Assembly (NCBI RefSeq): GCF_000142905.1
Contig: NW_013657610.1
Coordinates: forward strand, 30,627 to 94,626
Direction of reading: 5' to 3'
Origin: Thecamonas trahens ATCC 50062
Lineage: Eukaryota; Protista; Apusomonadida
Length of the DNA: 64,000 nucleotides
In this document: positions 1-46,600 of the stretch, piece by piece
Position numbering within the stretch: the first letter of the stretch is position 1
How the letters are laid out: every line of letters begins with the position of its first letter
Made by a program: the position numbers and the translations under genes
Notes under the pieces: model-generated
The model's database searches: none
Seen by the model: the letters and a program-made list of their open reading frames with translations, nothing else
What the model was told of the DNA's origin: nothing

Positions 1-3000
1 GCCGTGGCTGTTGCGGCCGCGCGTGAGGGCGTGGTCTACGCCCAGACCGAACCGCAGCCGACGGTGCCCGGCGTCATGGCGGTGGTGCTCAAGGCACTGG
101 CTTCCAACTCACCGTCGCTGGCCGGCGCCCTGGTCCAGGTTGTCGCCAAGGCCGTGGTCCCATTCGACTTCCTCATCTCACTCAAGGACGCCATAGTCAC
201 CATGGGCACTGGCGTTGCCGCCCTCATCCGCGAGTTCAAGGCCGGCTCGTCCTCGTCCTCGCGCGAGTCGTCGTTCAACATCGCCGGCCTCGCTGCAGCG
301 CTCGGGCAAGTGCTCGAGGTCATTTTCTCGCGTGTCGACCTGCGGCAGGTCGTTGAGCGCGGCCTGGTCCCTATGGCGTCGGCAGTCGTGGGCAGCATCC
401 CGCCCGACGCGCTCGACGAGATCTGCTCTTCCTGGTTCGACTCGCTGTACGAGGCCGTACTCTCGCAAGTGGTACCTGAGGTGGTCGAGGTCCTCCCCAA
501 GAGCCCTGCCTTCCGCGATGCCGTGGCCTCGGTCTTCAACCCGGCAGTGTTCGAAGACGTGCCGGGCCTCGCTTTCCTCGGTCCCAAGCTCCAGGCCTTC
601 CAGAAGAAGCTCTCGGGCCCGTACTACTTTGACATTACCATCGGCGATGTGTTTGCCTCGTTCAAGACCGCGGCAGTCAAGGCGCAGCGCGGCGACTGGG
701 CAAGCACGCTCAACGAGTTTGACCCGGACCCCAAGGTCACACCGCTGGTCAAAAGCCTCGTCCGCAAGCCGCCGCCGGGAACGCCCGCATCGCTAAAGGC
801 CTACGTCTCGCACTACGCCAAGAGCATCATGTCGGACTCGGTCTTTCCGCATTTTTGCGAGGCGCTCGTCTCAGAGATGGTCTACTCATCGACCACAGTG
901 GTTGAGGGGGTGTTCATGGTCCTTGTCGACGCGCTCTCTCGCGAGCCGGACCATATCCTGCGCAACGCGCTCAAGCCCATCCTCAATGCACAGGCGCGCT
1001 TCCGCAAACGCATCCAAAGCGACGGCGGGGCGGTCATGGGCGCCTTTGAGCGCAAAGCCAAGGTCGGCGGGCTGGTCCCGAGCTTGCTTGGCGTCCTCGT
1101 CTCGCTTCCGCTCCGCGGCCTCTCGCCGCTCATTGGCCTCGTCGCATCGCACTACGCCACGGCGCTGGAGGAGGAGGAGCTGCTGGCGATCGTCAACCGA
1201 GTGGGCTCGCGGTACCTTCCGCTGGCCACGACCTGGCGCGACTTTGTCATCACCCACCTCCATGCTTTTACACGCGAGCTCGTCGAGCCGGACCTCAAGG
1301 CCGAGGTGGACAAGATTGTGGACGACGGCGAGGCCGTCGGCCGCGAGCTGGTGGCCTTTGTGTACGAGATGGCGACGTCGATGGTCGAAGACGTGCTCGA
1401 CAAGGCATCCGGGACGGTGTCTGCCGCCCTCGACGAGCTACAGGGCCTGTCGTGGGACGAGGCGCAGGACGCAATCAAGGGTGCGATTCTGGAGGCGGAC
1501 GCGCTGGTGAGCCCCTGGGCCCGGGCGTACTCGACTCTGTACTCGGAGGGCGTGGGCGCCATCGTGGCCGACTTTGACCGCGACCTTGCACGGGCCCACG
1601 TGAGCGTGGCACTGACCAAGCTTAGCGAGCTTGTGCCCAAGATGCTTGTGCGGCGGTACGACGTGGTTGTCAAGGATGCCGCTGAAGCGCGTGGCCTGGT
1701 CTCTCAGGCCTTTGCGGACATGAACGTGGTGCTGGAGACCGATTTCGGCCACCGGAATGCAGAGAAGGCGCTCATCGACGTGCTGCTAGCCCTGTGCACC
1801 GCGCCACGGGGCGCTCTGCCTAGTGCCGATACGGCTGTTCGCGAGCGCGTGCTTGCCGCCATTGCGCGCGACGGAATTGTAGACGCACTCCGCGGGGTGG
1901 GCGAACGGTCGCCGCTGGAGCGGGCACTCGAGGTCGCCGAGCTGTGGACAAAAAACTCCCACGGCGATCTCGGTGAGATCGACGCGCTCGACGACTCACG
2001 GCGGAGCCGGCGGCACGACGTCCGCGACGCATTGCTGGTCGACAACGACGATGTTCAAGGCCGCTCGCCCGAGGCGCAGCTAGTCAAGCTCCTCACCTCG
2101 CTGGGGCTGGAGCGCGAGGTTGAGCGCGGTGCAGCGCGCGGCGCCCGGGTCGGTGCAACCGGTGGCGACTCGGACTCGGACTCGGACGACAGTGAGGCTG
2201 GCGGCAACGAGTGGCTCGATGCAGAGCTACGCGAGGCGGTGACGCTTTCGGAGGCCGGGCTCTCTATGTCGGACCGCGAGCGGCGGCTCTGCAAGACCCG
2301 CAGGGTGCTGCAGCGGGTGATGAGGATCTCGGGAAGCTCGACAAAGCAGTATCCAAAGCTCTCGCTGCACGGAATGGTGCTGCTCGCCCGGGTATCGACC
2401 AAGCTGCTCACTGACCTGCGGCAGCTCTTCCACATTGTGGGCGAAACGGACGAGGCCGACGGGGCGGTGCTCCGCGAGCTCTTTACCCTCAACTACGTCC
2501 TCATCCACGTCCTCCAGTTTTCAAGGCACGACTGCCCAAGACAATGGACGAGGTGGCGAGAGGCAAGGCCAACGCAGCCGAGGCTGCGCAGCTGTTTGAC
2601 ATCCTCGACGCGCTCTTTGAGCTCATGACCTCGATCGGCCACCGGGTGCGGGTGGTGCAAGGCGAGCTGGCAGTCGGTGCCCGGCTGACCCGCGGCTACC
2701 GGGAGAGCGCACAGGCGGTGGCAGTCGCCGCGCTGGATCTGGCGAGCTGCCTGCTGAACACGGGCCACGCGTTTGCGCGCCAGCTGGCAGGCGAAGTGGC
2801 CAAGGCCTCGGTCAAGGCTGCGCGCGTGGCGAGCAAGGCTAAGGGCAGCGCTGCTGATGCCGAGGCTAGCGGGAGCGAGGCCGAGTACGAGGCTGCGGTG
2901 ATGGAGGAGTTTGACTCGGCGGCATGCGAGGCCGTCGTTGTTCTCCTCATGATCCATGAGTCGTGGCCGGGCTTGCTCGTGGGCGGCGCGCGGGTGCCAG

Positions 3001-6000
3001 ACTATCTGGTGGCACACACCGCGGAGACGTCCGGATTCAAGGCCGGGAGCGAACCGCTGGACGCGTCGGCGTCACGGAGCGAGCAGCTGCGGGTCCTTGC
3101 CGCCCGCGAGGGCGAGGTTGCACTCGAGGTCTCGGGCTGCCTCTATGCCGTCTCGCGGATCTTTGCGTGTGCCCAGCTGAAACGGGTTGCTCGTGAGGCC
3201 GTGGTGCGTTACGGTCGGTCTGGTGCAACCGAAGGGGCGCTGGCAGCCCTGGTGGGTGGTCTCGGCGATGAGCGGGCTGGGTCGTTGTCGTCGTCGGACG
3301 AAGATGACGAGGCTCGCCCCAGTGGAGATCCGACCGGCGTGGGTCTCGACTCGCTGGGAGCCACTGTGGCCGAACTCTCCGAGAGTGGGCTGGACAAGGC
3401 CGGAGCCGAGGCTATCGAGCTCATTGAGTGGATGGTGCGGCAGGCAGCGCCGGTGCCGGGCGAGCTGCAGGATGCCGAGTTTGTCATTGCGCTTGCAGAG
3501 GAGGCGCTGGTGACGTACGCTGGGCAGGTTGTCGGGCGGAAGCGGGCACTCGGCTCGACGGCGCACAAGATGAAGCGGACGCTGGACGCAATGGGCAAGT
3601 GGCGCGAGACCAAGGTGAACACCCAGATGCCGCTGGCGTTTGTGGCGCACGCACTCGGACTTGGAGCGCTGGACGCGTCGGCAATTGCGGTGGCATCGTC
3701 GACAACCAAGACCGCGCTCGTGCGTGAGCTCATTGACATTGCCTACGACGAGGTTGTCGGTCGGCCCGAGGTGCTCTCGGAGGCGGTGGCAAAGCTCCCG
3801 ATGCGGACGAGCTCTGTCTCGCTCAGCGCGATTGTGGAGAGTGTGACGGCGGCGGTGGATCCGCACGCGCTGCTGGACCGACTCGTCGGTGCCATTGTAC
3901 GTGTGCTTCTGCGGCCGCAGTGCTACGTCGAGACTGTGCTGCAGTGCATCGGTGAGCGCGAGTCGCCGCGGTCTGTGCGTGCAACGATCATGAGCCGGCT
4001 TGCGATGATGAAGCGGCCATTTGACAAGGAGCTTGTCAAGCGGCTGCTGAACCCGAACGGGGCGCCGCTGTTTGTGGCGTCGACCAGGACGCTTGAGCGT
4101 TTCAATGCTGCAAGCAAGGTGGGCGACGCGATGGTCAGCTACCTTGCGGTTGCAGTGCCACGGATGGTGGCGTCGCTGCCGGGCACGCTTCAGGAGGAGA
4201 TGCAGAAAGAGGCGCGACTCGCCTTTCGTGCTATTCTCTCCAACTTTGTGCTCTCGTTCCAGCACATGCGTGGGCTGCTTGTGGAGGACACCTTTGAGGC
4301 AATGCTCGAGGTGTTTGGCCTGCCATACGGGACGATCCACCTCGGGCGTGCGTCGAATGTGATGTATGTAGAGACGCGCGCCGCGCGTGCTATTTTGGAC
4401 GGGCTCTCATCGGTACCGGCCGGATGGGCCGAGCAGGACTTGCTTGAAAAGATGTGCAAGGTGCACAGCTCTGCCGAGACCCAGGCCGGGGCCCTGCCCG
4501 AGGCGGCAACCGGCAACGAGACTGTTGAATCGCAGCGTGAGATTGTGTCTGTGGCCAAGGCAACGTCTGGCTGGGTCATGGCACGCATGGAGGGATCGCT
4601 CAAGTGGAGCGCCGCCGTGGAGGCTATCTTTGGCGACGAGGCTCAAAAATCATCATTTGGCCAAGCAGGGGAGCTGGAAGCCGAGCTGGAAGCCGAGCTG
4701 GCTCGGATGGAGTACGAGATCCGCGCGCGACGCGAGGAGCAGGCCGAGGTGCGGGCAACAGCAGCTGCCGAGGAGGGTGGGAGCGAGGACCGCACTGTCA
4801 AGGCCAAGGCCAAGTCCAAAGCCAAGTCCAAGTCCAAAGCCAAGTCCAAGTCCAAAGCCAAGAGCAAGGCCAAGGCCGATGCGCCCATGGAGCTGTTCAA
4901 GGTGGCGGACGCGGACGCGCGGATTCGGCGGTTGGAGTGGCGCGTCGAGGCATTGGGGCGGGTGCTCCGGGTTGGGCGCGAGCTCAGCCCGCACGCCGAG
5001 AACAGCGCTGTGCTGGAGGCGCTGTGCGAAGTGGGCGAAGCGCTCAACGAGTTGTGCAAGGTGTACACACCTGTGAGTGCACAGCGTGGCGTTGTGCTTG
5101 CGCTTGTGGCGCAGATCACGCAGCAGCTGTCAACAGAGGACTTTGGTGACCTCGTAGAGGAGGTGATCGAGGCCGGACGCGTGTTTGAGAGCGGGGCCGT
5201 AAGCGCAGTCGAGTTTGTGTGGCTGCGGATGGCGCTGACGCTGGACACGCGGCGGACGCTGGGTGGGCTACTGGAGCGGCTGCAGATCGGTGTGAGCGAG
5301 TTTGGGCTGGACATTTCGTTCAAGCCGAACGTGACCGACTGGTTGTACGAGACAATGACGGACGAGGCCGCTGGAGTGCTTGCCAACAAGTTTGGCGTGC
5401 GAAATCGCGAGACGTTTACGATGGGCAACCTGTTCGGCGACGCGACCGGCTCGTTTGCGCGGTATGTCCTGAGCAGCGACTCGTATCACGACAAGGTGCC
5501 TGCGCGACCGGGTACGTTTGCGCTGAGCGACGAGGAGGTGGAAGAGCTGCAGAGCCACCTATGCCAGCTGTTTACGCGGTGGAAGGTTGCCCTGACGGGG
5601 ACGCCACTGGAGCTGGTGGCGTACGCGCTGCAGTACAAGTGGACGGCAGACTTGGGCTCAGAGATGGGCCAGGTGTGGATGAACTTTATGTCGGGACGGA
5701 TGTTCGACTGGCTGCTGTACGAGGAGATGTTTGGCAAGGACGCGATGGGGCGGTGGCTCTACGCGCGCGAGGTGGAAGAGTACCTGCGGCTGTGTGACCG
5801 CGGAGCTGCCGGACGCGAGGAGGCTGTAGCGTTCTTCAGCAAGTGGATGGGCGGGATCAAGGGCTTCTCGTCGCGCAACAGCGCCCACGGCCGGGCTGGC
5901 AATGTGTACCTCTGGTTCCGTGGGATCATGGAAGACATGATAGCGGGCGACTACTTTTTCTGCTACTTTGACGAGGCTCGGGCCGAGGGCTTCAAGATCA

Positions 6001-9000
6001 AATCGATGCTGAAGACGCCCGTGCTCGAGCACGAGCTGTTGGGGCAGATGACGAAGCTGCTTGCGTCGTCGAAGCGTGCCAAACAGCTTGTGACGCACGC
6101 GGCGGTGGAGGCGGTGGGTCCTGTGGCACAGGTGGTGGTCATCAAGCTGCTGAGGCAGTTCCTCCGCAAAGTTGTGTTGGGCAAGCTGAAGGATGCGCTG
6201 CGCCGTGTGGACGCGCGTGTGCTGGAGGAGGTGATGGCCCAGGTTGTGGCTGCCGTCCGAACGTCGCCACTGGCCAAGCTGGCAGGTGTCTTTGAGGGAC
6301 TGTCGGGCGGCAAGGTGCGCGCGATTGTGGGCGCCTTCTTTTCTGCCTTTGCCGACGCGTTCCTCCGGGCGCTCGAGGCAGACATGGGCAAGATGACAGT
6401 GTTCGGCTCGCAGATTGTGGTCAGCTTTGTCGAGGCGCGGCGGAGTGGCGTATCTGTTCCCGAGCTGCTGGCGCTTGTGGAGGCGAACCTGGGCATGATC
6501 GTGGACATTGTGAAGGAGGTCGACATGGAGGTGTTCATGTCGAGTGTGGTCGGCGAGCTTGTGGAAGCGCTCATTCCGGGGCGCGTCCTTGTCTCGCTCC
6601 GCAAGCTCGGCGCGACATGGTCCAAGTCGGACTCGGAGGCGGCGACGCTCGGTGAAGGAAGCTCGAGCGGGTGCTGCGGATGCAGAGGAGGTGGGAGCCT
6701 TACTGCAGAGATCGACGACGACGACGGCGACGGCGAGGTCGGTGAAGAAGACAACGGGGCCGTGGACTTTGGCGAGCTTGTGGAGGCGCTGGCAGAGCTT
6801 GTGGGCGAACTGGTGACCGAGAGCGACTTTGGCGAGCTGCTGAGCAAGCTCAAGGGCGTTCTGGGTGTGCCTGCCATGGCTGTGGTCATGGACGGCTACC
6901 GGAGGCGCGGGCTGGACTACGGCGGCAGCGTCGTGGCCAAGTTCTACACGCGGGTGTTTGAGCGTGCCGGTGTTGGCTCTATGGCGTATGACGAGCTGGT
7001 GGAGATGAGCGAGCGTGCAGAGAGCGGCAGCGGAGCATCGTATGTGGCGATTGTGGACCGGCTGCTGAAGGCGTCGGAAGGCGGGGACGAGGAGAAGGAC
7101 GCCACCGACGCAGAGAATGCTTACGACGCCGACGAAGAAGGCGAGGAGGAGGAGGAAGGGAAGAGGAAGACTCGCTTGTCAAGGCGAGCATGGAAGAGGC
7201 GTTGAGCAAGCTGGCGCCGAAGCGGATTGCGAAGGCTGTGGCGCAGGCCGAGGGCGAGACCGAACTGCTGGGACAGTTCCTGCGGGAGCTTGTGGGGCTG
7301 GCCAAGGTCATCACGTCGCGGAGCGAGGGCGGAGCCGACGGAGCAAGGGCTGGCAACGGCGACGAGGGTGGCGACGATGCAGATGGTCGGTCCAGTCGGT
7401 CGATGTCGCAATCTGTACATGCGCTCGCGGAAGTGATGCACAACATGGTGTCATGGCGGGAGCTGGGCAAGGAGATGGTCGTCGAAGCAATGACCGGCGT
7501 GGAGCGCAAGTTCAACGCCGAGATCTGGCCAGAGTTTGCGGGGCGTCTGCGGACGCAGGTTGCCGAGGCGCTAGAGGCGCTGGAAGACGCTGAAGACGAG
7601 GACGATGAGCTGGAGACGGCGCGCGAGACCGTGACTTCAGTGCAGACGAGCCTGTTTGGGTACCTGGAGGTGGTGGCACAGGTCATGGTGGCATCGACCG
7701 AGAGCGGCGAGGTAGAGCTCGCGCTTGTGCGTTCGCTGTATGCCGATGGCGAGAGCGGGTCCATCTCGAACATGGTGTCTGGCAAGCGTGGCGGAGGCTG
7801 GGACGTGCTGGGCGTGCTCGGGACGGTGTTCCCGCTGCTGGGACAATCGCTTGCGGTGCTGAGCGAGGGTGTGCCTGGGGCGGATGAGTACTTTGCCCAG
7901 CGGAACGACGGGTTTGGTCTTCGTGTGCTTCAGGTGCTCAACGAGTGCCGCGTCGACACGGGGCGGCTGCTGAGCTCTGGGCACGAGTCTGAGGCATTCG
8001 AGTTTGCGGACGTGAGTGGGGCATCTGGAGCATGGGAGCAGGTTGTTGTGGATGCCATCAAGGCTGTGTTCTTCCCGTTCTCTGAGTCTCTTGGCCCGCG
8101 CGGGTTCGACATTGAGCAGAGCGCGAGCGAGGTGCTCGGCGATTTGGAAGAGCGGATGCTGGACTTGCTTGACTTTGTGCAGCAGACGCTGCGCGGGTTC
8201 TGGCGGAGCGCTGTTGCTGCGGTGGACGAAGACCAAAGCCTGGGTGCCCAGCTGGCCAAGCGGGCGTGGGCGGTTGTTGGCGAGGAGCTGCGGCGACTTG
8301 CGGTGACCGGGCGGGAGGTGCGGCGGATGGGACGTGAGGTACGTGGACGTCTGGAGTTTGCGTCGACCGAGGTGATGGAGCGTGTTGGCGGAAGCGTGGA
8401 GGAGGTGATGCGGTACGACGAGGCGATGCCTGCGGCACTGGAGGCGTACCAAGAGGCCGAGGGCGCGTATACGGCCGCCAAAGATCTCGTGGAAGGGCTG
8501 CTGGGCGAAGTGAGCGACTACGTGTTTGGTGAGCTGCTACCCGGGCTTGTGGGCGAGGTCTTTGACCTTGTCCTCATTCCGACGTCTGCAGCGACGGCGT
8601 CGTGGAAGGCTGTGCTGCCACTTGTTCTCGAGTTTGTGCAAGAGCTTGTGAGTGCGTCGCCGCTTGTGCTTGTGAACCAGATCCTTGGGCTTGCAGCGAG
8701 CAAGGTTGTGGACGGGCTGCACTCGCAGGAGGCGATGGTGCTCTCTGTGCTGCGATCGCTGCGGCTGCGGCTGCAGGGGCTCGTGCGGCAGCCGCGGTCT
8801 GTGTGGCGCGGCGTTCAGGCTGTGGGCGGCCTACTCGAGTCGGGCGCCGACGGCGACGTTGTGCTGCGGCGCGTGTTTGCCTGGGTTGACGTGCGCGGCC
8901 TGATGCAGGCGCTCGCTGCAGAGCTTTGCTCGCTGGTTGTGGCGCCGCACAAGGTGCTGCTCGGCGGGCTTGTCTCGCCGCTCGCGGCTGCGGCTGCGAG

Positions 9001-11731
9001 CCAAACGGAGGCGCTGCTGGAGCTGCAGGGGCAGCTGCTGAGGCAAGCGCCCGATGTGTGGAGCGAGGTTGGCGAGATTGTCAAGCGCGCTGCGATGGTC
9101 GGCCTCTCGCGCGAGACGCTTGTGTCCGGCATCCAGGGCCATGTGGTAGGCGTGGCCAACGACCAGGGATGGGATGCCGAGGAGGGCCTTGTGCTCAACT
9201 ACTTTTACGTGTTTGACCAGGTCCACGACGGCGTGCTCAAGCTGATGAAGAGCAAGTTTGTGATGCGGGTGGAGAATGCTGTGGCGCGTGCGCGGGAGCA
9301 AGCGCCTGCGGCTGTGGAACAGTTTGTGCTCCGGCTTGTGCTTGGGTGGCTGGAGGGCGGAGGGAGCGAGACGTCGCTCCGCGGCTTCCTGGAAGGCGCG
9401 ACCGAGAACGTGGTGACGTTTGTGTCGCAGGTCGAGGGCCTGGCAGAGGAGCTGCTTGTGGGCTTTCTGGAGTCTGCAGGCGAGGCGCTGGTCGAGTACG
9501 CAACCGAGACGCTGCTGGCCGGTATCGGGCAGGCTGCGCTTCGGAACGTGAGCGTTGTGGCGCAGCAGAACGCGAGCGTGGTCTCGTTGCGAAAGCTGTT
9601 CAACGCCATGCACGACCGAGTGCGGGACGTGGTGAAAGAGATGCTGCAGCACGAGGCGCTTGAGGATGTCCTGGCCAGCGGCGAGGATGTGGCCAGCTGG
9701 CTGGAGCCTGTGTATGGCTGGATGGCCGACGGCGGACTAGAGACGTTTGTCGGTGGCTCGCCGGACGCCGAGGATGACGAGGACGTGGTCGATCAAGTGC
9801 TGCGGCTGTGTAAGGAGGCGAGCGGCGGCGGACAAGGTGGCAGCAAGGTCAACGAGGTGCTCGCGGCTGTGGTGAGCGGGCTCCGGGCCGCGGTGGAGGA
9901 CGCGATGGAGGAGGGAAGCGAAGGCGTGTTTGTCATGGCGGCGCGAGCTCTGGAGGACGGCGTGCTGCAGAGCCTGAAGGACGGTGGCGAGGCCGGCGGC
10001 GCTGCGATGATGAGCCGGCTGATGGCGATTGTGGCCAAGGGCATGGAGGCTGTTGCGTCGCGGCGGAGCGAGGATGTGCTGGCGCTGCGGCGGTCGGGCG
10101 AGCGCGTGGACGAAGCCGTCGAGGTACTCGGAGGCGAGCTCTCCGAGTCGATCGGTGAGGACTACTACGAGCGTGCGTTTGTGGCGTCGTACGTGCTGGA
10201 TGTTGTGTGCGAGCCTGTGCTGCGGATGATGGTGTCGTCAACCAGTCCGGCGGCGATGCTGACGAGTCTTGTGGCGGCGCGAAAGAGCAGGAGCGCGCAG
10301 ATTGTGGTGAAGAGCTGGCCAAGAATTGTGGCGCAGTTTGCTCAGCGTGTGCTGTCCGAGGTAGGCGGCGCCGACGGCGACGATGAGAGCGGCGGCGAGG
10401 GGCGGCGGTGGAGACCGCTGGATTTTGTGCGGTCGTTCTTTGGCGACGACGTGGGCAGGGCGGCGATCAAGGTGGAGACGATGGAGGCCGTGGCGCGCGC
10501 GTCGGGCAAGTGGGTGTCGCAAGTGGTGGCGCCCGTGGCCAAGTCTGGCGCCGGGGCCAACAAGGCTGCTGGGGCAGGCGGAGCGTCGCTTGTGGCGCGC
10601 GGGCTCGGACTCCGTGGGCTCGGGGTGCAGGCGTACGTCGAGGGCGTGGTGGACGGTGTTCTGCTCAACGGGCCGCTAGGCCCGGTCTTTGCGCCACGGT
10701 CCGGTGTGATCAAGGCTGCAGTCGCCGGGCTCGATGAGAGCATGGCCGAGCGGAAGCTCGGGCAGCTCATCGGCGAGCTTGTTGCGGCGAGTGCACGCAA
10801 GGCGGCAGAGGGCTCTGAAGAGGCGCTGGTGTACCTCGTGCGGTTCCTGGCAGCGCCGGAGCTCGGCCCGCGATTTGTGGAAGCGCTGCTTGTGGGCGCG
10901 AGCGTGGGCATTGCGAGCGTGCAGGAGGCGGTTGCGAGCGTTGTGGCGTGGGCGCGGCTGATGGTGAAGAAGGGCGCCGGGAAGCGAGGCGAGGTGGTTG
11001 CAGCGCTTGTGGGCCAGTGGCGGGCGCTCCTCGCCGAGGTCCCCGCCCTGGCCAAGAAGGAGATGGAGTCTGGCGGAAGCGTGCTCGAGTCCGAAGTCCT
11101 TGCGCCGTACCGAGAGGTTGCGGAGGAGCTTGTGGGCAAGATCCTGAGCAACTCGCAGTCCACCATCCGGACGCTCAACTCTGTGCTCGGCAAAACGACG
11201 CAGGTTGTGGAGGGAGGGAAGCGGATGCTGTCGTCTGTAGACGAGAAGCTCAACCGTGGCTTTGCGGTGATTGTGGACGATGTGGTGGCCGAGGTGAAGA
11301 GCCAGACTGCGGGGCGGTCGTCGACTGTGGAGGAGAGCGAGCTGCGTGACAAGTGCGCAGATGCGACAAGCGTGGCGATGAAGCAGCGGGTGAAGAGCGT
11401 GTTTGGCGTGAGCGACACGCAGCTTGCAGTGAGTCTCGGCGTGGCCGTCCTCCTCCTGGCCATCATTCTCGCCTTTATCTTCCTCGGTGTGAGCGCGTTC
11501 CGCGGCGGTGGCGCGGCGACAGCGCTCATCAACTCGATCCTGGTGGTGGTGGGTGGGTTCGGGACGAGCGCCGGTAACTCGAAGAGCGGCAGCGGCGTGT
11601 TCCGCATGGTCATGCCCAAAATCCAGGCCTTCCTCGAGACGTGGGTGGGCAAGGCGATGGTGGGCGGGCTGGTGAAGGAGATTGCCGGCGAGGTGGTGGT
11701 GGAGATGGTGCGGGACGACGCGCTGCTGTGA
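1..11731 (+). CDS. Giant (>3,900 aa, 5' end outside the window) predicted alpha-helical protein with C-terminal transmembrane hairpin; function unknown
   Basis: ORFs 4-2628, 2544-7205 and 7190-11731 share the same composition. They join by adding one base at CAG TTTT CAAG (~2518-2521, giving Q-F-F-K-A-R-L-P-K-T-M) and at GAA GGG AAG (~7168-7170, giving E-G-E-E-E-D-S-L-V-K-A-S-M). The C-terminus has the hydrophobic segments LAVSLGVAVLLLAIILAFIFLGVSAF and ATALINSILVVVGG. Confidence 0.8.
4800..4877 (+). repeat. Coding (KA/KS)n repeat, KAKAKSKAKSKSKAKSKSKAKSKAKA
   Basis: Hexamer repeats aaggcc/aagtcc/aaagcc, in frame within the giant CDS. Confidence 0.9.
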
Positions 11732-36362: not shown

Positions 36363-36448
36363 CCGCACCAGCTTCAAGCTTGTTGTTAGCAAAGACATCT
36401 TACCAGTACTCTGTCCCCACTTTGCGCTGCAAGCACACGAACGCTGCT

Positions 36449-39400
36449 TCACGTAGAGCTGTCAGCAGTGTCGGCAGTGTCGGTGGTGTTGGCATTGTCG
36501 GCGGTGTCGATGGTCAAGGTGTACGGTGTCGTCGGCGGACCGATGAGAATCGGAGGTCGGCGAGGTGCAAATGCAAGCGCGAGCGGAGTCTTCGGCACTC
36601 GGAACACGAGCGGATACGTCTCACCAGCAAAGCAGAAATTCAGGTCTTCCACCGCGACTGCATCTCTTACTCGCTTCGGCCGCTTGATCTTACCGAGGTA
36701 GCGGAACACACCCGCGTCAAGCTGCCAAAGTCGCACATTGTCACTCCAGCTCGTTGTCGCTGTGGCGACCGTAAACGGTGTAAACTTAAGAAACCAGATT
36801 GCGCGCACAGACGCGCTGTGTCCCGACGAGGAGCCTGTCAGCACAGTCACAGGAGGATTGTAGCGCTTCGGGTCGCCTGGAGAGACATCTGGCGCATGCC
36901 ATACCCGTATGGTCCCATCCATCGCCCACGACACAAGTATTGGGAGCGTGTGGTCCGCGCTGGTAAGGTGCGCCACTGCGACCACACCACACACTTGGCC
37001 CGTGTGGCCGCGCAGCTTCTCACAGCTGCCATCGTCATGTATGACCACAATCGAATGGTCTGACAGCCAGGTCACGGCCAGCTGTGGTGACAACACCGCA
37101 GCGCCGATCACAGCTGCGCTGTTCAGCACGTCGACCGGTACGGCACCGCAAGTCTCCGCTACTTCAGAAGACGTTGACAGGAGCTGTAGCGGCTGACCGC
37201 GACCCGCCCACAACCACAGCTGGTCATGTTCTGTTGCCACCGCGAGTCGGGCGGCTTCGGCGTACACCACGCGCTCCTCGTCATCGTCACCCACACCGAT
37301 CTCGATCACCGTGCCGTTCTTGCGCCACACCAGGACACGGTCGTCATTGCTCCGAGTAGAAAACACTGCCTTGATCCCCTCCTTCACGTCTAGAGCGCCC
37401 ATCACACGGTAAAAGCTTCCGGACATGCGCCACACCTGGACACAGCTCTCGGTCCATGTGGCCAGAACAGGCGAGCTGTCAGAATTCTCGAGTTCGGTCG
37501 ACAGGACCACCAGCCCCGCCACAGCATGACCACCGGCAAGGATTCCACAGCACTCGCCCTCGTACCGCTCGCCGTTCCAGCGCCACATCCAAACCACAGG
37601 CACCTGTGCCCACTCGCCGGCGCGCGACCATGACAATAGCGCCGGGAGACCATCGGCACCAGCAGTCTCGATGACAATCACATCTTCCACGGCCATCGGA
37701 TGGCCACCCAGCACCGTGCTGTGGTAGAACGGTGGCTCATCCGTCGGCGTCCACACCCTCAATGTGCCGTCGGCAGACCACGACACAAAACTGTCGTTCC
37801 GCAGCAAGCTGATGCCGCGCACAGCCTCTGCGTGTCCATCGAGTACCGCCAGACGCTTGCCCGCCACAACGTCCAGTACATCAACGGTGGCACCGCAGCC
37901 CACAGCCACACGGCTGCCACTCAGCGCCGTACACACCGGGCCGGCGTTGGCCCCAGAAAAACGTACCGCTGCGCGCCACGATGTGAGCTTGGGTCCATGG
38001 CGTAGATGGGCACATATGTGAGATGAGACAGACTCGCACGCGCTGCCGCTTCCAGCGCAGCAAGTTCGGACGTCACACCTTTGTATGCCAACCGCCTGAC
38101 AATGGCCGCACCCAGCGTGCACTCGCCCCGCGCAATCATGTCCTGCGACAGTGCCAGTGCTCGCTCCAGCTCAGCAACGACACTCACCCGCTCAACACGC
38201 AGCTCAGCCACCGCACGGAGGTCTGCAAGCGCGCCGGCCACATCGCCGGCCACCCGCGCACTGAGCCAGTCCCATGACAGAACCACATCAACAGCAGTCT
38301 TGTGCGCTGCCGGAGTGTTGGCCGCCACAAGATGGTAAACACCGTGGACAAATGCCCACCTCTCGCGCTCGCTTGACTCGCCCGATTTGCACATGACGGC
38401 AACTGCTGCTGCGGGGAGGCTGACTCTGGAGGGCAGCCGCAGATGAGAGCAAGGTGCCGCGCGGCCAAGAGAGTAGGCTCGACATCAACTGCTTTGCGCA
38501 GGAACTCGCGATGGAGGTCGTGGAGTTCAACGCCAACGACCAAGCCTTCAGGATTGCGGATAGCAGAGAGCAGCGACGCAGCTTCCAGTGCATCCCACGC
38601 AACCTTGCGCACAGCCTCGGACATTTCCAGCGTTGGCTCAATAATGAGCATGTCAATCGTCGTGTCAGATGGAAAAAGGCCAAGCATGGCGTACACATTC
38701 CGCGCGTAGTCGTCAAGGCGCATCACGGCATGATACATAATGGCAAAGATGTCCTCATAGCGCGAGCCAGCAAACTTGTCCGAGGCGAGCGAGAGCATAG
38801 CATTAAAGTCGCGGTCAGCAGTGTCGAGCTTGTCAACGGTGTCGATCGAGCCACCCAGAACAGCCAATGCGATGGCGTGGTTGTGGCAGAGCTCGGCCAG
38901 TCGGCCAATCCTCTCGTCGTCGGGGCCAATACCGTCGAGTCCGACGTGGCGGGTAAGCACAAGTCGCGCGTCGGCTGGCGAGAGCATGCCGAGTGTCACC
39001 GTTGCAGTAGACGACACCATGTTGGCCGAATTGCGGGTTGTGACCAGGACGGCGTGCGGAGGACGGACAGCCTTCGTGAAAACCTCAGCTTGTCGCGCGG
39101 TCCACACATCATCGAGCACGAGAAGGACACGAGTTCCCGCCGCGGCAAGAACTATTAGTTGATCAGCAAGGCTGCGCTGGAGATCGTCCAGCTCGGCAAA
39201 CTGTGAGACTTTGTAACCGAGACCCTGCTCGAGAAGGTAGCCCAGCTTGCGCGTGAGAGCATCGCTCGAAGTGCGGTCCTCACCCAGCTCGAGCCAAAAT
39301 ACTCGAAACTCGGAGACGATGTCGGGCTGGGTGGCAATGTCGGCAGCCAGGAGTGACTTGCCGATGCCACCGAGACCTTTGAGACCCACGACCGTCACGC

Positions 39401-41428
39401 TCTCTTCCTTCAGCAACGCACAGACGGCAGCGGCACGCTTGGAGCGCAATGGCACGTATGCAGACGGGAGTGGCTTGGGCGGAAGGGTCGACGGCAGAAT
39501 GCGAACCTTTGAGAGCACCTTCAGCGAGCGGACCGCCAGGTCTTCTAACGACGTCTCGACAGAGATCTGACGCAAGTCATACAGTGCCAAGCCATGGTCA
39601 AGAAGCGCATAGGCCGTGATCACGTGATCGACCTTGTCGGTTGGAGTGAGATGTCTGTGGCGCCAGGTCCGGAACTGACGCTCTTGGTCTGGCACTTGGA
39701 AGAACGTGTACATGAGCTTGATGACAGAGTGGAGAGCAGACGTGGAGGCCTTAACTGCTATTTGCAGAGAAGCGTTGGATTGATCGCCTTGGAGCGCGGC
39801 ATGATCAGCCTCGGCAGCAGCGAGGAGGTCGTCGAGGTTGGCCAACTTGTGGGGTGCAGGGAATGATTTGAGCGTAGCAAGCGAAATGTTGCCATGGCCG
39901 GGAAACACCGGGAATACCTTGCAGTGGTTTGCCGGACAAAGTGCGGCCTTGGCCTCGGCCACAGCCCAGCGTGTAACGAGAAAGTACTCAGAGACGATGA
40001 CAACAACGACCCGCGACGCCTTGACAATGTCGGCGCAGTCATCTGGGTATGCACACCGCATGCCGTCAAGTGACTTGGTGTCCACAAAGACCTTGAGGGA
40101 TTGGTTCCGCTTGAGGATGCGATCGCGGAGGTCGATCGCAAGGCCCTTGTCGTACGAGCCATGACAGATGAAGAGGTCATAGGTCTTTGGGGGCACAGCG
40201 GGTGAGGATGACGGCCCGGCTCTGTCATCAGAGTCGGGCGAGAACTCGCTCAGAGTTGACGGGAGAGGCGTTGTAAGTGACGAAGTGGCGGAGTCAATTG
40301 GTGCCGAGAGAAGATCGGGGCGAGCGAGACGAAGAAAAGTAAAAACGTCGGGCGAGAGGTTGGGCGTATCGCGCGCGAGGGCATAGGTGACGTCGTCGGG
40401 GATGACGCGGTAAGAGACAATGAGCTGGACAAACTCGACGTCGTTCAGCAGAATTGCGTGCTGAAGCGCCGACTGATAGACGGAAATACCGGCTTTGGAC
40501 AACAGCCATCGCACAGTCTTGGCGTGGCGGCTGCGGATAGCAACATGCAACGGTGTCAATCCGTCCTTGTCGGCCACATTGACATCGGCTCCGCCTTCGA
40601 TCACCAGCCACTTGACCACCTCCCAGTTCTTGTCCTGAGCAGCAGCATTCAGCGGTGTCCCTCCGTCCTTGTCGGCCACATTGACATCGGCTCCCCCCTC
40701 GGTCACCAGCCACTTGACCACCTCCATGTGGCCGTTCCAAGCAGCAGCATGCAGCGGTGTCCCTCCGTACTTGTCGGCCACATTGACATCGACTCCGCCC
40801 TCGGTCACCAGCCACTTGACCATCTCCCAGTTCTTGTCCTGAGCAGCAGCATTCAGCGGTGTCATTCCGTTCTTGTCGGCCACATTGACATCGGCTCTGC
40901 CCTCGGTCACCAGCCACTTGACCATCTCCCAGCTCTTGTTCTGAGCAGCAGCATACAGCGGTGTCCTTCGGTACTTGTCGGCCACATTGACATCGACTCC
41001 GCCCTCGGTCACCAGCCACTTGACCACCTCCCAGCTCTTCTTCCGAGCAGCAACATACAGCAGTGTCCCTCCGTCCTTGTTGGCCACATTGACATCGGCT
41101 CTGCCCTCGGTCACCAGCCACTTGACCACCTCCATGTGGCCGTCCTGAGCAGCAACATACAGCGGTGTCCCTCCGTCCTTGTCGGCCACATTGACATCGG
41201 CTCCGCCCTCGGCCACCAGCCACTTGACCATCTCCCAGTGCCGTCCTGAGCAGCAACATACAGCGGTGTCCACCCGTCCTTGTCGGCCACATTGACATCG
41301 GCTCCGCACTCGGTCACCAGCCTCTTCACCTCCTCCTGGTCACCTCTCCTCACAGCCGAGCACACCTCCAACACCAGGTCACCCCCAGCAGTCCTCCACA
41401 CCATCCCGTCCCCTGCACCTTCAGCCAT
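36449..41428 (-). CDS. Ankyrin-TIR-NB-ARC(STAND)-helical-WD40 protein, ~1,660 aa, with three apparent single-base frameshifts
   Basis: Four ORFs join by adding one base at ~41240 (GGC[C]AC, as in sister repeats), 38413-38416 and 37951-37961. TIR: YDLFICH..KVFVD..SRVVVVIVSEYFLVTRWAVAE. NB-ARC: GLGGIGKS, LLVLDDVW, VLVTTRN, LHDL. WD40: LDGHAEAV..SWSADGTLRVW, LRGHTGQV..SWAMDGTIRVW, SWSDNVRLW. Confidence 0.88.
40500..41330 (-). repeat. Array of ~8 near-identical 102-bp (34-aa) ankyrin repeats
   Basis: cacttgacc recurs at 40609, 40711, 40813, 40915, 41017, 41119 and 41221. Confidence 0.97.
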
Positions 41429-41916
41429 ATGCCTCCCACACCCACAGCACACAACACACGAGAGAGGTGTACCCCCGTACCCCCTCTTCCCCTTCCCCTC
41501 CTCCCTCTGCCGGCTTCCTTGCCGTCACAGCGACACCGAATGCGTTTTTCGCCAGAGAATCCCCAAAAAATACATATCGCAAACATGCGACAGTGACTCT
41601 GTTCTGCCCGGCTGGAGCCATTACCAGCTACTGACCTGCGCAGTCGGTCTTGCTGGTAGTCGCTGTCATCAGAGGAGGTACATGAATGAGCGATCATGTC
41701 GGTCTACGTGGGTTGGGGAGTGTGTGTGTGCGAGGGGGTGGGGGTGGGTAGCTCGTCGGCGAGGGCGTTGTCCACCGCGTCGTTTACCGCGTTATGCGCT
41801 ATGTGGCGATGTTGCTCGTCCCCCTCCCTCCCCAAGCACTCCAACGTTGTCGAGATCATGACCACAATCCTCCTTCTTCCCTGTGGCTGCTGTTCACTGT
41901 TCAATCCACCTCGTCT

Positions 41917-45721: not shown

Positions 45722-46600
45722 TCACTCCTCCGCCCGCACAGTCCCGCTCTCGCCGATGTCGGCCTCGCCCTCGGCCGCCAATGCCACATCAAAGGCCTTG
45801 GCGAACATGGCTACGCCGCGCGGACAGATGTCCACCAGCCGGATGTTCCACACATGCCGACTAGTGCCATTCTCCCTCCGCCGCGCCAGCCACCTCATCA
45901 CCGCCTCGACCACCGCCGTCCGCGCCGCCATCTGTTCTGCAGCCTTGATCTTGCTCGTCGCGCTGTAGTGGGTGAAGATCCCGCCCGAGATGGCCGGCAC
46001 CGCCACAGACGCCATCATCACAGACTCGCCACCCGGAGCAAGACCATCATCTCTCACTTCGACCCCAACATCCTCCTCAACCGTATCTGGACGATCCCCA
46101 TCGCCCGCCGGCCCGGCCCGACCACTTTGCGAGCGGACAGAATCCAGGGCGGCAACGACGCGCTCTGCGGCCGTTAGAGCACGACGGACGGTGCGCCGGA
46201 TGCGCGGGACAACCTTGGCAAAGGTGGCTCTTGCCACGGGCCAGTCTGTCCAGATGGGACCGACGGCATGGACGACGTACCGCACACCACGGACAGCAAG
46301 ACCTCCCTCAGCCAGCTGGACTCCGGCCTGAGTCGATGGCACGCTGACGCCTGACCTCTCCTCGCCATCGTCACGCCACCATTGCTTGATCTTCCTCGTC
46401 ACGTCCACCGGATGGCTGGCTCGTCTCAGTGCACCCGATACGCCGCAGTCCATGGCCGTAAACGAGAGCGAGTTAGCCGCGTTGATCACCACATCGACCT
46501 CCTCCTCGGCAATGTCGCCTGCCACAACCTCCACCACACTCCCGCACGCCATCGTCGCCGTTCGCACAACACGTCGCCGCTGCTTTCGCCGTGACGCCAT
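45722..46600 (-). CDS. Stand-alone MacroD-type macrodomain protein (ADP-ribose binding/hydrolase)
   Basis: VVAGDIA..VDVVINAANS..CGVSGAL, VVHAVGPIW, SVAVPAISGGIF. Confidence 0.92.
   Translation of the reverse strand: MASRRKQRRRVVRTATMACGSVVEVVAGDIAEEEVDVVINAANSLSFTAMDCGVSGALRRASHPVDVTRKIKQWWRDDGEERSGVSVPSTQAGVQLAEGGLAVRGVRYVVHAVGPIWTDWPVARATFAKVVPRIRRTVRRALTAAERVVAALDSVRSQSGRAGPAGDGDRPDTVEEDVGVEVRDDGLAPGGESVMMASVAVPAISGGIFTHYSATSKIKAAEQMAARTAVVEAVMRWLARRRENGTSRHVWNIRLVDICPRGVAMFAKAFDVALAAEGEADIGESGTVRAEE

What the first reader, a model, noticed from the sequence alone, without database searches (positions are those of the whole stretch)
36449..41428. Hidden NLR/apoptosome-like receptor with a four-part ANK-TIR-NB-ARC-WD40 architecture in a protist
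Seen: four ORF fragments rejoin into one ~1,660-aa protein. The TIR keeps the W-x-x-x-E motif (WAVAE, Glu codon 39954-39956). The NB-ARC has an intact P-loop, Walker B, TTR and MHD-like LHDL, while the GLPL motif reads HAIAL. Known: that Glu is the catalytic residue of NAD+-cleaving TIRs (SARM1, plant TNLs, Thoeris ThsB), and NB-ARC+WD40 is the APAF-1 layout. STAND receptors are normally tripartite with the effector at the N-terminus. Inference: this is an oligomerising immune or cell-death sensor with two repeat modules flanking an enzymatic TIR, a layout I do not recognise as described. Automated annotation would likely fragment it.
Basis: partly seen in the sequence, partly recalled or inferred. 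Interest (0 to 1): 0.9.

Follow-up and report, generated by a model that had tools for sequence, protein, structure and literature searches.

The report
Ankyrin-TIR-NB-ARC-WD40 receptor gene, Thecamonas
A marine flagellate (Thecamonas trahens) carries one long gene for an immune-receptor-like switch protein with an extra, highly variable ankyrin array in front of its TIR "executioner" domain. At least two of the three frame breaks that hide it in the reference genome are absent from independent sequence data.

Summary
On the minus strand, 41428 to 36449, four ORF pieces are collinear with intact paralogues. Pfam calls ankyrin repeats, TIR_2, NB-ARC and WD40 above their curated cut-offs, and every motif sits at the stated coordinates. 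The genome is Thecamonas trahens ATCC 50062.

Each break is a one-base deficit. Independent data carry an extra G behind 38412 (a 2020 run of the same organism and an estuary metagenome). They carry an extra A behind 37954 (the metagenome and a seawater RNA library). One metagenome contig bridges both sites. The third break (about 41241) is not covered, but it only affects the first ankyrin repeat.

The gene is a divergent member of a species-specific family: at least 29 TIR and 21 NB-ARC matches in the genome. Intact TIR-NB-ARC-WD40 paralogues of 1,271 to 1,733 aa lack ankyrin repeats. This scan already flagged the family on other DNA of the same genome.

What is particular here is the N-terminal ankyrin array: eight near-identical 34-residue units with ten hypervariable positions. 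No ANK-TIR-NB-ARC protein was found among the relatives searched.

The TIR-NB-ARC-WD40 core is already known from red algae, bacteria and plants (TNPs). I read this as a new variant of a known kind. NADase activity, oligomerisation and an immune role are inferred, not shown.

The parts
41426..41428 (-). Probable start codon (first ATG of the upstream ORF piece)
   Evidence: Translation of 41111-41452. The Met lies 8 codons into the open frame.
40410..41390 (-). Ankyrin array: one N-terminal unit, seven further near-identical 34-aa units (DNA period 102) and a divergent C-terminal cap
   Evidence: Pfam Ank_2 E 9.7e-110. TRF finds period 102, 7.8 copies, 88% matches at 40539-41336. Units were extracted. 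At ten hypervariable positions pN is 0.39 against pS 0.008; elsewhere pN is 0.066 against pS 0.062.
41238..41244 (-). Join 1: one base missing relative to the repeat register (GGCC read as GGC). It shifts the frame between the first and second ankyrin units.
   Evidence: Three-frame view. The stretch is 187 nt where the six other repeat registers have 188. No run covers it, so it is unresolved.
40182..40409 (-). Ser/Pro-rich linker. Homology to the C26 TIR paralogue starts at about 40300 (residue 337), which marks a module boundary.
   Evidence: BLASTP. Contigs of X3 (40204-40406) and X6 (40196-40481) bridge it. There is no in-frame ATG between residues 195 and 417.
39750..40181 (-). TIR domain (TIR_2 type, starts YDLFICHGS; Pfam match 39897-40172)
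   Evidence: Pfam TIR_2 31.1 bits and TIR 22.8 bits. PDB sequence match to AtTIR 3jrn. Model pLDDT is about 74-83 over the core.
39954..39956 (-). Glu codon of WAVAE, at the position of the catalytic Glu of NADase TIRs
   Evidence: Coordinates. It aligns with the E of WCLDE in 3jrn. It is invariant in 7 paralogues.
38413..39509 (-). NB-ARC module (Pfam match 38736-39419): P-loop 39354-39377, Walker B 39102-39125, TTR 39033-39041, HAIAL 38865-38879, LHDL 38514-38525
   Evidence: Pfam NB-ARC 55.2 bits. PDB matches to NRC4, NRG1-like and ADR1. Foldseek top hit is the RPP1 core, followed by other plant NLRs, Apaf-1 and CED-4. The motifs are invariant in the family.
38412..38413 (-). Join 2: the window has C4 on the gene strand where other data have C5
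   Evidence: An extra G behind 38412 in X2 and X3. Sequence context.
37955..38411 (-). Linker between NB-ARC and WD40, with no Pfam family. I guess it is helical from its residue make-up; it was not modelled.
   Evidence: No Pfam hit. It is 36-37% identical to the same region of three paralogues, in order.
37954..37955 (-). Join 3: the window has one T on the gene strand where other data have two
   Evidence: An extra A behind 37954 in X3 (DNA) and X13 (RNA library). X3 record 19 (37837-38840) bridges joins 2 and 3. Context.
36452..37954 (-). WD40 beta-propeller (about 8 degenerate blades, residues 1-424 of the piece) plus a disordered tail of about 75 aa. The stop codon is at 36449-36451.
   Evidence: Pfam WD40 35.9 bits. 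No tandem DNA repeat and no internal BLAST repeat. The all-beta model has 35 strands, mean pLDDT 54. Foldseek hits are WD40 propellers, including 8-bladed ones.

Best explanation
This is one real and probably intact gene of Thecamonas trahens. It encodes about 1,660 aa in this order: ankyrin array, TIR, NB-ARC, linker, WD40 propeller.

It is a divergent member (38-47% identity) of a species-specific family of TIR-NB-ARC-WD40 STAND genes, and it has gained an N-terminal ankyrin array. The frame breaks in the reference are one-base deficits of that assembly or strain.

Inferred mechanism, by analogy with plant TIR-NLRs, Apaf-1 and bacterial STAND defence proteins:
1. At rest, the ADP-bound NB-ARC keeps the protein monomeric.
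2. A ligand binds a repeat module, either the WD40 propeller or the hypervariable ankyrin surface.
3. Binding permits nucleotide exchange and oligomerisation.
4. Oligomerisation brings the TIR domains together, so the Glu-containing active site cleaves NAD+.
5. The result is NAD+ depletion or a nucleotide signal, and then cell death or arrest.

Shown here: the gene structure, the domains, the motifs, family membership and the restored frames. Inferred: the enzymatic activity, the oligomerisation and the immune or non-self role.
For: - Domains are above the Pfam cut-offs, and the motifs are at the stated coordinates.
- The pieces are collinear with intact paralogues across all frames.
- Intact paralogues of 1,271-1,733 aa have the order TIR, NB-ARC, WD40.
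- The genome holds at least 29 TIR_2 and 21 NB-ARC matches.
- The organism was identified from named paralogue proteins on contigs whose lengths match this genome's.
- The extra bases at 38412 and 37954 appear in independent runs. One contig bridges both sites, and six contigs from an RNA library are 98-100% alike over the WD40 and linker parts.
- None of the listed strain variants creates a stop.
- ANK through NB-ARC is a single 1,041-aa frame, with no ATG between residues 195 and 417.
- The Glu aligns with the plant TIR catalytic position.
- The Foldseek top hit is the TIR-NB-ARC core of RPP1, followed by other plant NLRs, Apaf-1 and CED-4.
- The ankyrin units show strong non-synonymous excess at ten positions only.
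Against: - Join 1 is not covered by any run, so a real frameshift there cannot be excluded. A downstream ATG at 41231 would still give seven array units plus the cap, then TIR, NB-ARC and WD40.
- One contig of run X2 leaves the window at 40293 with 24 letters found nowhere in the genome.
- The GLPL motif is replaced by HAIAL.
- Both structure models are of low confidence (mean pLDDT 58 and 54).
- The TIR match is close to the cut-off (31.1 against 28 bits).
- Contigs from an RNA library do not prove transcription.
- No assay of any kind exists.
- No match to known bacterial defence families in PADLOC or NCBIfam reaches its cut-off.
Confidence: 0.6

Rival explanations
1. Decaying pseudogene in the reference strain. 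The three one-base deficits are real in ATCC 50062, and the intact versions in other data belong to other strains or alleles.
For: There are three breaks in 5 kb, while neighbouring ORFs of 1,685-2,096 aa are unbroken. Several family members are clearly fragmentary, with stops. X2, X3 and X6 share substitutions against the window, so they may be a different haplotype.
Against: X2 is labelled as the same organism and has the extra G at 38412. The shared substitutions make the window the odd one out at several sites, as assembly errors would. Other genes in the window may also be split by single bases. There are no stops within the frames.
Confidence: 0.12
2. The gene is intact but is not an NAD+-cleaving immune receptor. 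The TIR would act as a scaffold or adaptor. Alternatively, the protein would be a metabolic or stress sensor, in the manner of SARM1, rather than a sensor of non-self.
For: Many animal TIRs (MyD88, TIRAP, IL1RAPL) score almost as well as the plant TIR. There are no hits over the cut-off to antiphage families. The WD40 part of this copy is not diversified. The neighbouring genes are ordinary.
Against: The catalytic-position Glu is invariant across paralogues. The family is multi-copy, and several copies lie close to contig ends. Hypervariable repeat positions are typical of recognition receptors (PMC4986451).
Confidence: 0.18
3. The ankyrin array is not part of the mature protein. This could be through an alternative N-terminus or a structural variant at the module boundary, or because the reference is mis-joined inside the repeat array.
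For: The X2 contig diverges exactly at 40293, where paralogue homology begins. TIR cassettes in this genome are joined to many partners, including kinase, Ulp1 peptidase and LRR domains. Contigs break at the repeat array.
Against: X3 and X6 contigs bridge 40196-40481 exactly as in the window. The frame is uninterrupted, with no ATG between residues 195 and 417. There is no AG acceptor at the breakpoint. The foreign 24-mer occurs nowhere in the genome.
Confidence: 0.08

Closest known systems
Thecamonas trahens TIR-NB-ARC-WD40 family (e.g. XP_013758908.1, XP_013758057.1; annotated only as 'WD repeat protein' or 'TIR domain-containing protein')
   Same: Collinear homology through TIR, NB-ARC, linker and WD40 at 38-47% identity. 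The same invariant Glu, P-loop, Walker B, HAxAL and HDLH stretch.
   Different: The other members begin 20-210 residues before the TIR and have no ankyrin repeats. They have 13 or more near-identical WD40 repeats. This copy has an N-terminal ankyrin array and a short, degenerate propeller.
Plant TIR-NLRs (RPP1, ROQ1) and TNPs (TIR-NBARC-TPR); TIR-NBARC-WD40 of the red alga Chondrus crispus (PMC9806590, PMC9153377)
   Same: The order is TIR, then NB-ARC, then a repeat sensor. The best fold match is the RPP1 TIR-NB-ARC core, and the best sequence matches are plant NB-ARCs. The catalytic-position Glu is present.
   Different: The sensor is WD40, not LRR or TPR. About 150 residues lie between the TIR and the P-loop. 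A repeat array sits N-terminal to the TIR. Orthology was not tested.
Apaf-1 / Dark / CED-4 apoptosome proteins
   Same: NB-ARC followed by WD40. Foldseek gives E 1e-10 to 1e-8.
   Different: There is no CARD. No sequence-level PDB hit at E 0.01 or better. One propeller is modelled rather than two.
Fungal NLRs with internally conserved, hypervariable ANK, WD40 or TPR repeats (HET-E/NWD type; PMC4986451)
   Same: Near-identical repeat units whose differences concentrate at a few positions, with a large non-synonymous excess.
   Different: In fungi the variable array is C-terminal to the NOD and the effector is N-terminal. Here the variable array lies in front of the effector.
SARM1 (ARM-SAM-TIR) and oomycete ANK-TIR proteins (PMC9153377)
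   Same: A helical repeat domain N-terminal to a TIR. In SARM1 that domain holds the TIR inactive (from my own knowledge).
   Different: They have no STAND ATPase and no WD40. T. trahens also has ANK-kinase-TIR proteins, whose TIRs form a separate clade from this one (weak support).

Membership tests
NB-ARC (AP-ATPase) STAND NTPases | Pfam NB-ARC score above the gathering cut-off | tested here: met
   55.2 bits against 23.5.
NB-ARC (AP-ATPase) STAND NTPases | Walker A GxxxxGK[ST], Walker B hhhhDD, and the RNBS-B TTR motif | tested here: met
   GLGGIGKS, LLVLDDVW and TTR. All are invariant in 7 paralogues.
NB-ARC (AP-ATPase) STAND NTPases | Canonical GLPL motif | tested here: not met
   It reads HAIAL and aligns over the GVPLA of NRC4. 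HAxAL is fixed across the family, so it is a lineage variant and not decay.
NB-ARC (AP-ATPase) STAND NTPases | MHD-type His-Asp in the winged-helix domain | tested here: met
   LHDL at 38514-38525. The HDLH stretch is invariant.
NAD+-cleaving TIR domains | TIR fold or family match | tested here: met
   TIR_2 31.1 bits against 28, and TIR 22.8 against 21.3. The model core has pLDDT 74-83.
NAD+-cleaving TIR domains | Glu at the catalytic position | tested here: met
   The E of WAVAE aligns with the E of WCLDE in 3jrn. It is invariant in the paralogues.
NAD+-cleaving TIR domains | NAD+ turnover, and dependence on self-association | not testable with these tools
   This needs an enzyme assay.
Plant TNL | C-terminal LRR (plus C-JID) | tested here: not met
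   The C-terminal part is WD40 and no LRR was found.
Apaf-1-type apoptosome protein | N-terminal CARD and a double WD40 propeller | tested here: not met
   No CARD. The model has 35 strands, consistent with about 8 blades. That model is of low confidence.
T. trahens TIR-NB-ARC-WD40 family | Collinear homology over TIR, NB-ARC, linker and WD40 | tested here: met
   E 1e-86 to 1e-127 and 38-47% identity.
Receptors with homogenised hypervariable repeats (fungal HET-E/NWD type) | Near-identical repeats with variation confined to a few positions and non-synonymous excess | tested here: met
   Met for the ankyrin array. Not met for this copy's WD40.

The most novel reading that the evidence does not exclude
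The hypervariable N-terminal ankyrin array is a working recognition or autoinhibitory module. The receptor would then read two different repeat surfaces. Alternatively, it would hold its TIR shut with a variable lid, as SARM1's ARM domain does. Either way, the sensor would sit in front of the effector, a layout not described for NLR-type proteins.
Probability: 0.3. Interest if true: 0.7.

Novelty: new variant of a known kind. Interest (0 to 1): 0.5.

Why it matters
Apusomonads are close unicellular relatives of animals and fungi, and little is known of how such cells sense infection or non-self.

This genome holds an expanded, species-specific family that joins a TIR with the catalytic-position Glu to an NB-ARC switch and repeat sensors. 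That adds a lineage to the growing picture of NLR-like immunity outside plants, animals, fungi and bacteria.

This copy shows that the family shuffles modules. The same TIR cassette is also found with a kinase, a Ulp1 peptidase and LRRs. A variable repeat array can also be placed N-terminal to the effector. That placement offers a natural test of whether sensor position matters in STAND receptors.

On the practical side, single-base errors in the public reference hide the gene. No protein containing it was returned by the protein searches.

Tried and rejected
- **Introns as the cause of the breaks:** rejected. Homology runs straight across each break. Independent DNA has one extra base at two of them.
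- **A splice site at 40293:** rejected. There is no AG acceptor.
- **PADLOC and NCBIfam scans:** only hits far below the cut-offs.
- **First homology search by words:** four weak hits only.
- **Whole-ORF search:** swamped by ankyrin proteins. It returned no self hit and no ANK+TIR+NB-ARC+WD40 protein.
- **Representative search with a local domain scan:** among 163 proteins, 43 have both TIR and NB-ARC, and none has ankyrin repeats before them.
- **ESM Atlas:** busy on both attempts.
- **The look-up of encoding contigs for the neighbouring gene:** nothing on record.
- **Structure models:** both are of low confidence, so fold matches are supportive only.
- **Own-genome DNA search for an allelic copy covering join 1:** none found.
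- **Literature:** no paper in the library holds both "Thecamonas" and "TIR domain". The only papers holding "Thecamonas" and "NLR" were on unrelated topics.
- It was redone by reference.
- **Joined protein:** the joined 1,660-aa protein was never built, printed or searched. All searches used the pieces by reference.
- **Complex prediction:** not run, so there is no test of TIR self-association.
Full report
**What is there**

On the minus strand between 41452 and 36449 lie four ORFs: 41111-41452, 38184-41309, 37921-38394 and 36449-38122.

Pfam gives the following:
- Ankyrin repeats in the first two ORFs (Ank_2 E 9.7e-110).
- TIR_2 (31.1 bits, cut-off 28) at ORF2 residues 380-471.
- NB-ARC (55.2 bits, cut-off 23.5) at ORF2 residues 631-858.
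- WD40 (35.9 bits, cut-off 27) in the last ORF.

The Glu codon of WAVAE is at 39954-39956. The others are GLGGIGKS, LLVLDDVW, TTR, HAIAL and LHDL.

From the first ATG (41428) to the stop (36449-36451), plus three missing bases, the gene has about 1,660 codons.

**Organism**

Proteins found with a profile of this family carry NCBI and UniProt names from Thecamonas trahens ATCC 50062. They sit on contigs of 533,784, 456,871, 114,015, 716,227 and 578,410 bases. These are exactly the lengths of contigs C17, C22, C70 (the window's own), C1 and C10 of this genome. Earlier notes of this scan name the same organism. I checked the identification independently in this way.

**The three breaks**

Three intact paralogues align to the region in order. 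The alignment runs frame 1, then 3, then 2, switching at 38406-38454 and 37951-37975.

I laid contigs of four public runs on 36400-41500.
- An extra G behind 38412 appears in X2 (same organism, 2020) and in X3 (estuary metagenome, 2025).
- An extra A behind 37954 appears in X3 and in X13 (seawater metatranscriptome).
- One X3 contig (37837-38840) carries both.

On the gene strand these are C4 against C5 and T against TT. Each extra base puts the downstream piece in frame.

None of the listed substitutions in the four runs makes a stop codon. Several substitutions are shared by X2, X3 and X6 against the window. This makes the reference the odd one out.

The third break (about 41241, GGCC read as GGC) falls in the ankyrin array. 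The repeat phase is kept except for one missing base. The stretch is 187 nt where the six other registers have 188. No run resolves it. An X3 piece that ends there is only a 45-nt match, apparently from another ankyrin gene.

Join 1 matters little for the architecture, for three reasons:
- ANK, TIR and NB-ARC lie in one uninterrupted 1,041-aa frame.
- There is no in-frame ATG between residue 195 (inside the array) and residue 417 (inside the TIR).
- An ATG at 41231 would still give seven array units and the cap.

X3 and X6 contigs bridge the ankyrin cap and the TIR (40196-40481) exactly as in the window.

One point remains unexplained. An X2 contig follows the window from 38212 to 40293 and then carries 24 letters found neither in the window nor in the genome. 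The breakpoint is the codon where homology to another TIR gene begins. There is no AG acceptor there.

**Family context**

The genome has at least 29 TIR_2 and 21 NB-ARC matches. It has 44 matching stretches to this gene's TIR-NB-ARC part, and several of them lie close to contig ends.

Five uninterrupted frames of 1,271-1,733 aa have the order TIR, NB-ARC, WD40, and none has ankyrin repeats.

In an alignment of the window copy with six paralogues:
- The Glu, the P-loop, Walker B, HAxAL and the HDLH stretch that holds LHDL are invariant.
- The window copy is the most divergent, at 38-46% identity.

HAIAL is therefore a family-wide variant of GLPL and not a sign of decay.

The same TIR cassette is joined to other partners:
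- An ankyrin array plus a TKL kinase in front of it (P0011, P0012).
- A Ulp1 peptidase behind it, on C26. That copy is 65% identical to residues 337-600 of this gene.

In a TIR tree the window's TIR pairs with the C26 copy (support 95/89). It then groups weakly with a TIR-NB-ARC-WD40 gene, and not with the ANK-kinase-TIR clade. The likeliest history is that an ankyrin array was added to a TIR-NB-ARC-WD40 gene. This step is inference.

**The repeat modules**

The ankyrin array has eight 34-aa units plus a cap. Its DNA is a 102-bp tandem array with 88% matches.

Ten positions carry three or more different residues. At those positions crude pN is 0.39 against pS 0.008. At the other 24 positions pN is 0.066 against pS 0.062. 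By my own knowledge of ankyrin structure, the variable positions fall in the hairpin and first-helix region that forms the usual binding face.

The WD40 piece (about 500 aa) shows no tandem or internal repeat. It models as an all-beta domain of 35 strands followed by a disordered tail (mean pLDDT 54). It matches WD40 propellers, including 8-bladed ones.

So in this copy the array that looks diversified is the N-terminal one. In the paralogues it is the C-terminal WD40, according to earlier notes of this scan. I did not re-test those notes.

**Relatives elsewhere**

A profile search of 1.84 billion representatives gave 2,778 hits at E 0.001 or better, but only 10 below 1e-30. Seven of those ten are named T. 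trahens proteins. The other two full-length hits are unnamed metagenome proteins: one TIR-NB-ARC-LRR and one TIR-NB-ARC-TPR. The ANK-kinase-TIR proteins match by their TIR alone.

Among the 163 proteins retrieved, 43 have both TIR and NB-ARC, and none has ankyrin repeats before them. The word-based searches returned no protein containing this ORF and no protein with all four domains.

By sequence against the PDB, the NB-ARC is nearest to plant NRC, ADR1 and NRG1-type NLRs, and the TIR is nearest to AtTIR. Apaf-1 does not appear.

A low-confidence model (mean pLDDT 58) has the RPP1 TIR-NB-ARC core as its best Foldseek match. Other plant NLRs, Apaf-1 and CED-4 follow.

**Comparison with the literature**

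- TIR-NBD-WD40/TPR/LRR proteins are described in plants and bacteria, and ANK-TIR proteins in oomycetes (PMC9153377).
- TIR-NBARC-WD40 is reported in the red alga Chondrus crispus, and TIR-NB-TPR in bacteria (PMC9806590).
- Internally conserved, hypervariable repeat arrays are known from fungal NLRs (PMC4986451).
- TIR-like NADases in NACHT-WD40 proteins of animals were reported recently (bioRxiv 10.64898/2026.09.21.753143).
- No paper in the library holds both "Thecamonas" and "TIR domain".

**Verdict**

The gene is real and most likely intact in nature. The core architecture is known, and the family was already flagged by this scan on other DNA of the same genome. The N-terminal hypervariable ankyrin array in front of the TIR is the new element.

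How it works is inference from family knowledge: a ligand-triggered NB-ARC oligomer that activates a TIR NADase.

The joined protein was not built or searched. All work used the pieces by reference.

Noticed in passing
window 4-2628, 2544-7205, 7190-11731 (+): Three abutting long ORFs (874, 1,553 and 1,513 aa) on one strand, with no Pfam family at 1e-5. This may be another giant gene split by single-base errors of the assembly.
   Followed up: partly
L019:3260-5983 (-) = G000 C26: A 907-aa frame with three parts: a TIR cassette 65% identical to this gene's residues 337-600, a remnant of the P-loop region, and a C-terminal Ulp1 (Peptidase_C48) domain. This is a TIR-protease fusion.
   Followed up: partly
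P0011, P0012 (G000 C1 and C10; L018, L017): T. trahens proteins annotated as 'TKL protein kinase' have the order ankyrin array, protein kinase, TIR. Their TIRs are 52-61% identical to this gene's TIR.
   Followed up: partly
L021:2251-5478 (ENA metagenome contig, P0009): The nearest relative outside the named T. trahens proteins is a TIR-NB-ARC-LRR protein (1,075 aa). This is a plant-TNL-like layout, found on an unnamed metagenome contig.
   Followed up: no
window 45722-46600 (-): Another note of this scan calls this ORF a stand-alone macrodomain near the TIR gene. Pfam gave no family at E 1e-5.
   Followed up: partly
window 36527-36529: TGT in the window reads ATA in X2, X3 and X6 alike. So do several other sites (36781, 36785, 36787, 39726). 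The reference is the outlier at all of them.
   Followed up: partly
window 40293-40294: A contig of run X2 leaves the window here with 24 letters that are absent from the whole genome. This is the same point where paralogue homology starts.
   Followed up: partly
G000 C70:108000-114015 (beyond the window's end): A partial 2,359-aa protein (AMSG_11190, P0007) with several NB-ARC and TIR modules lies at the end of the same contig.
   Followed up: no
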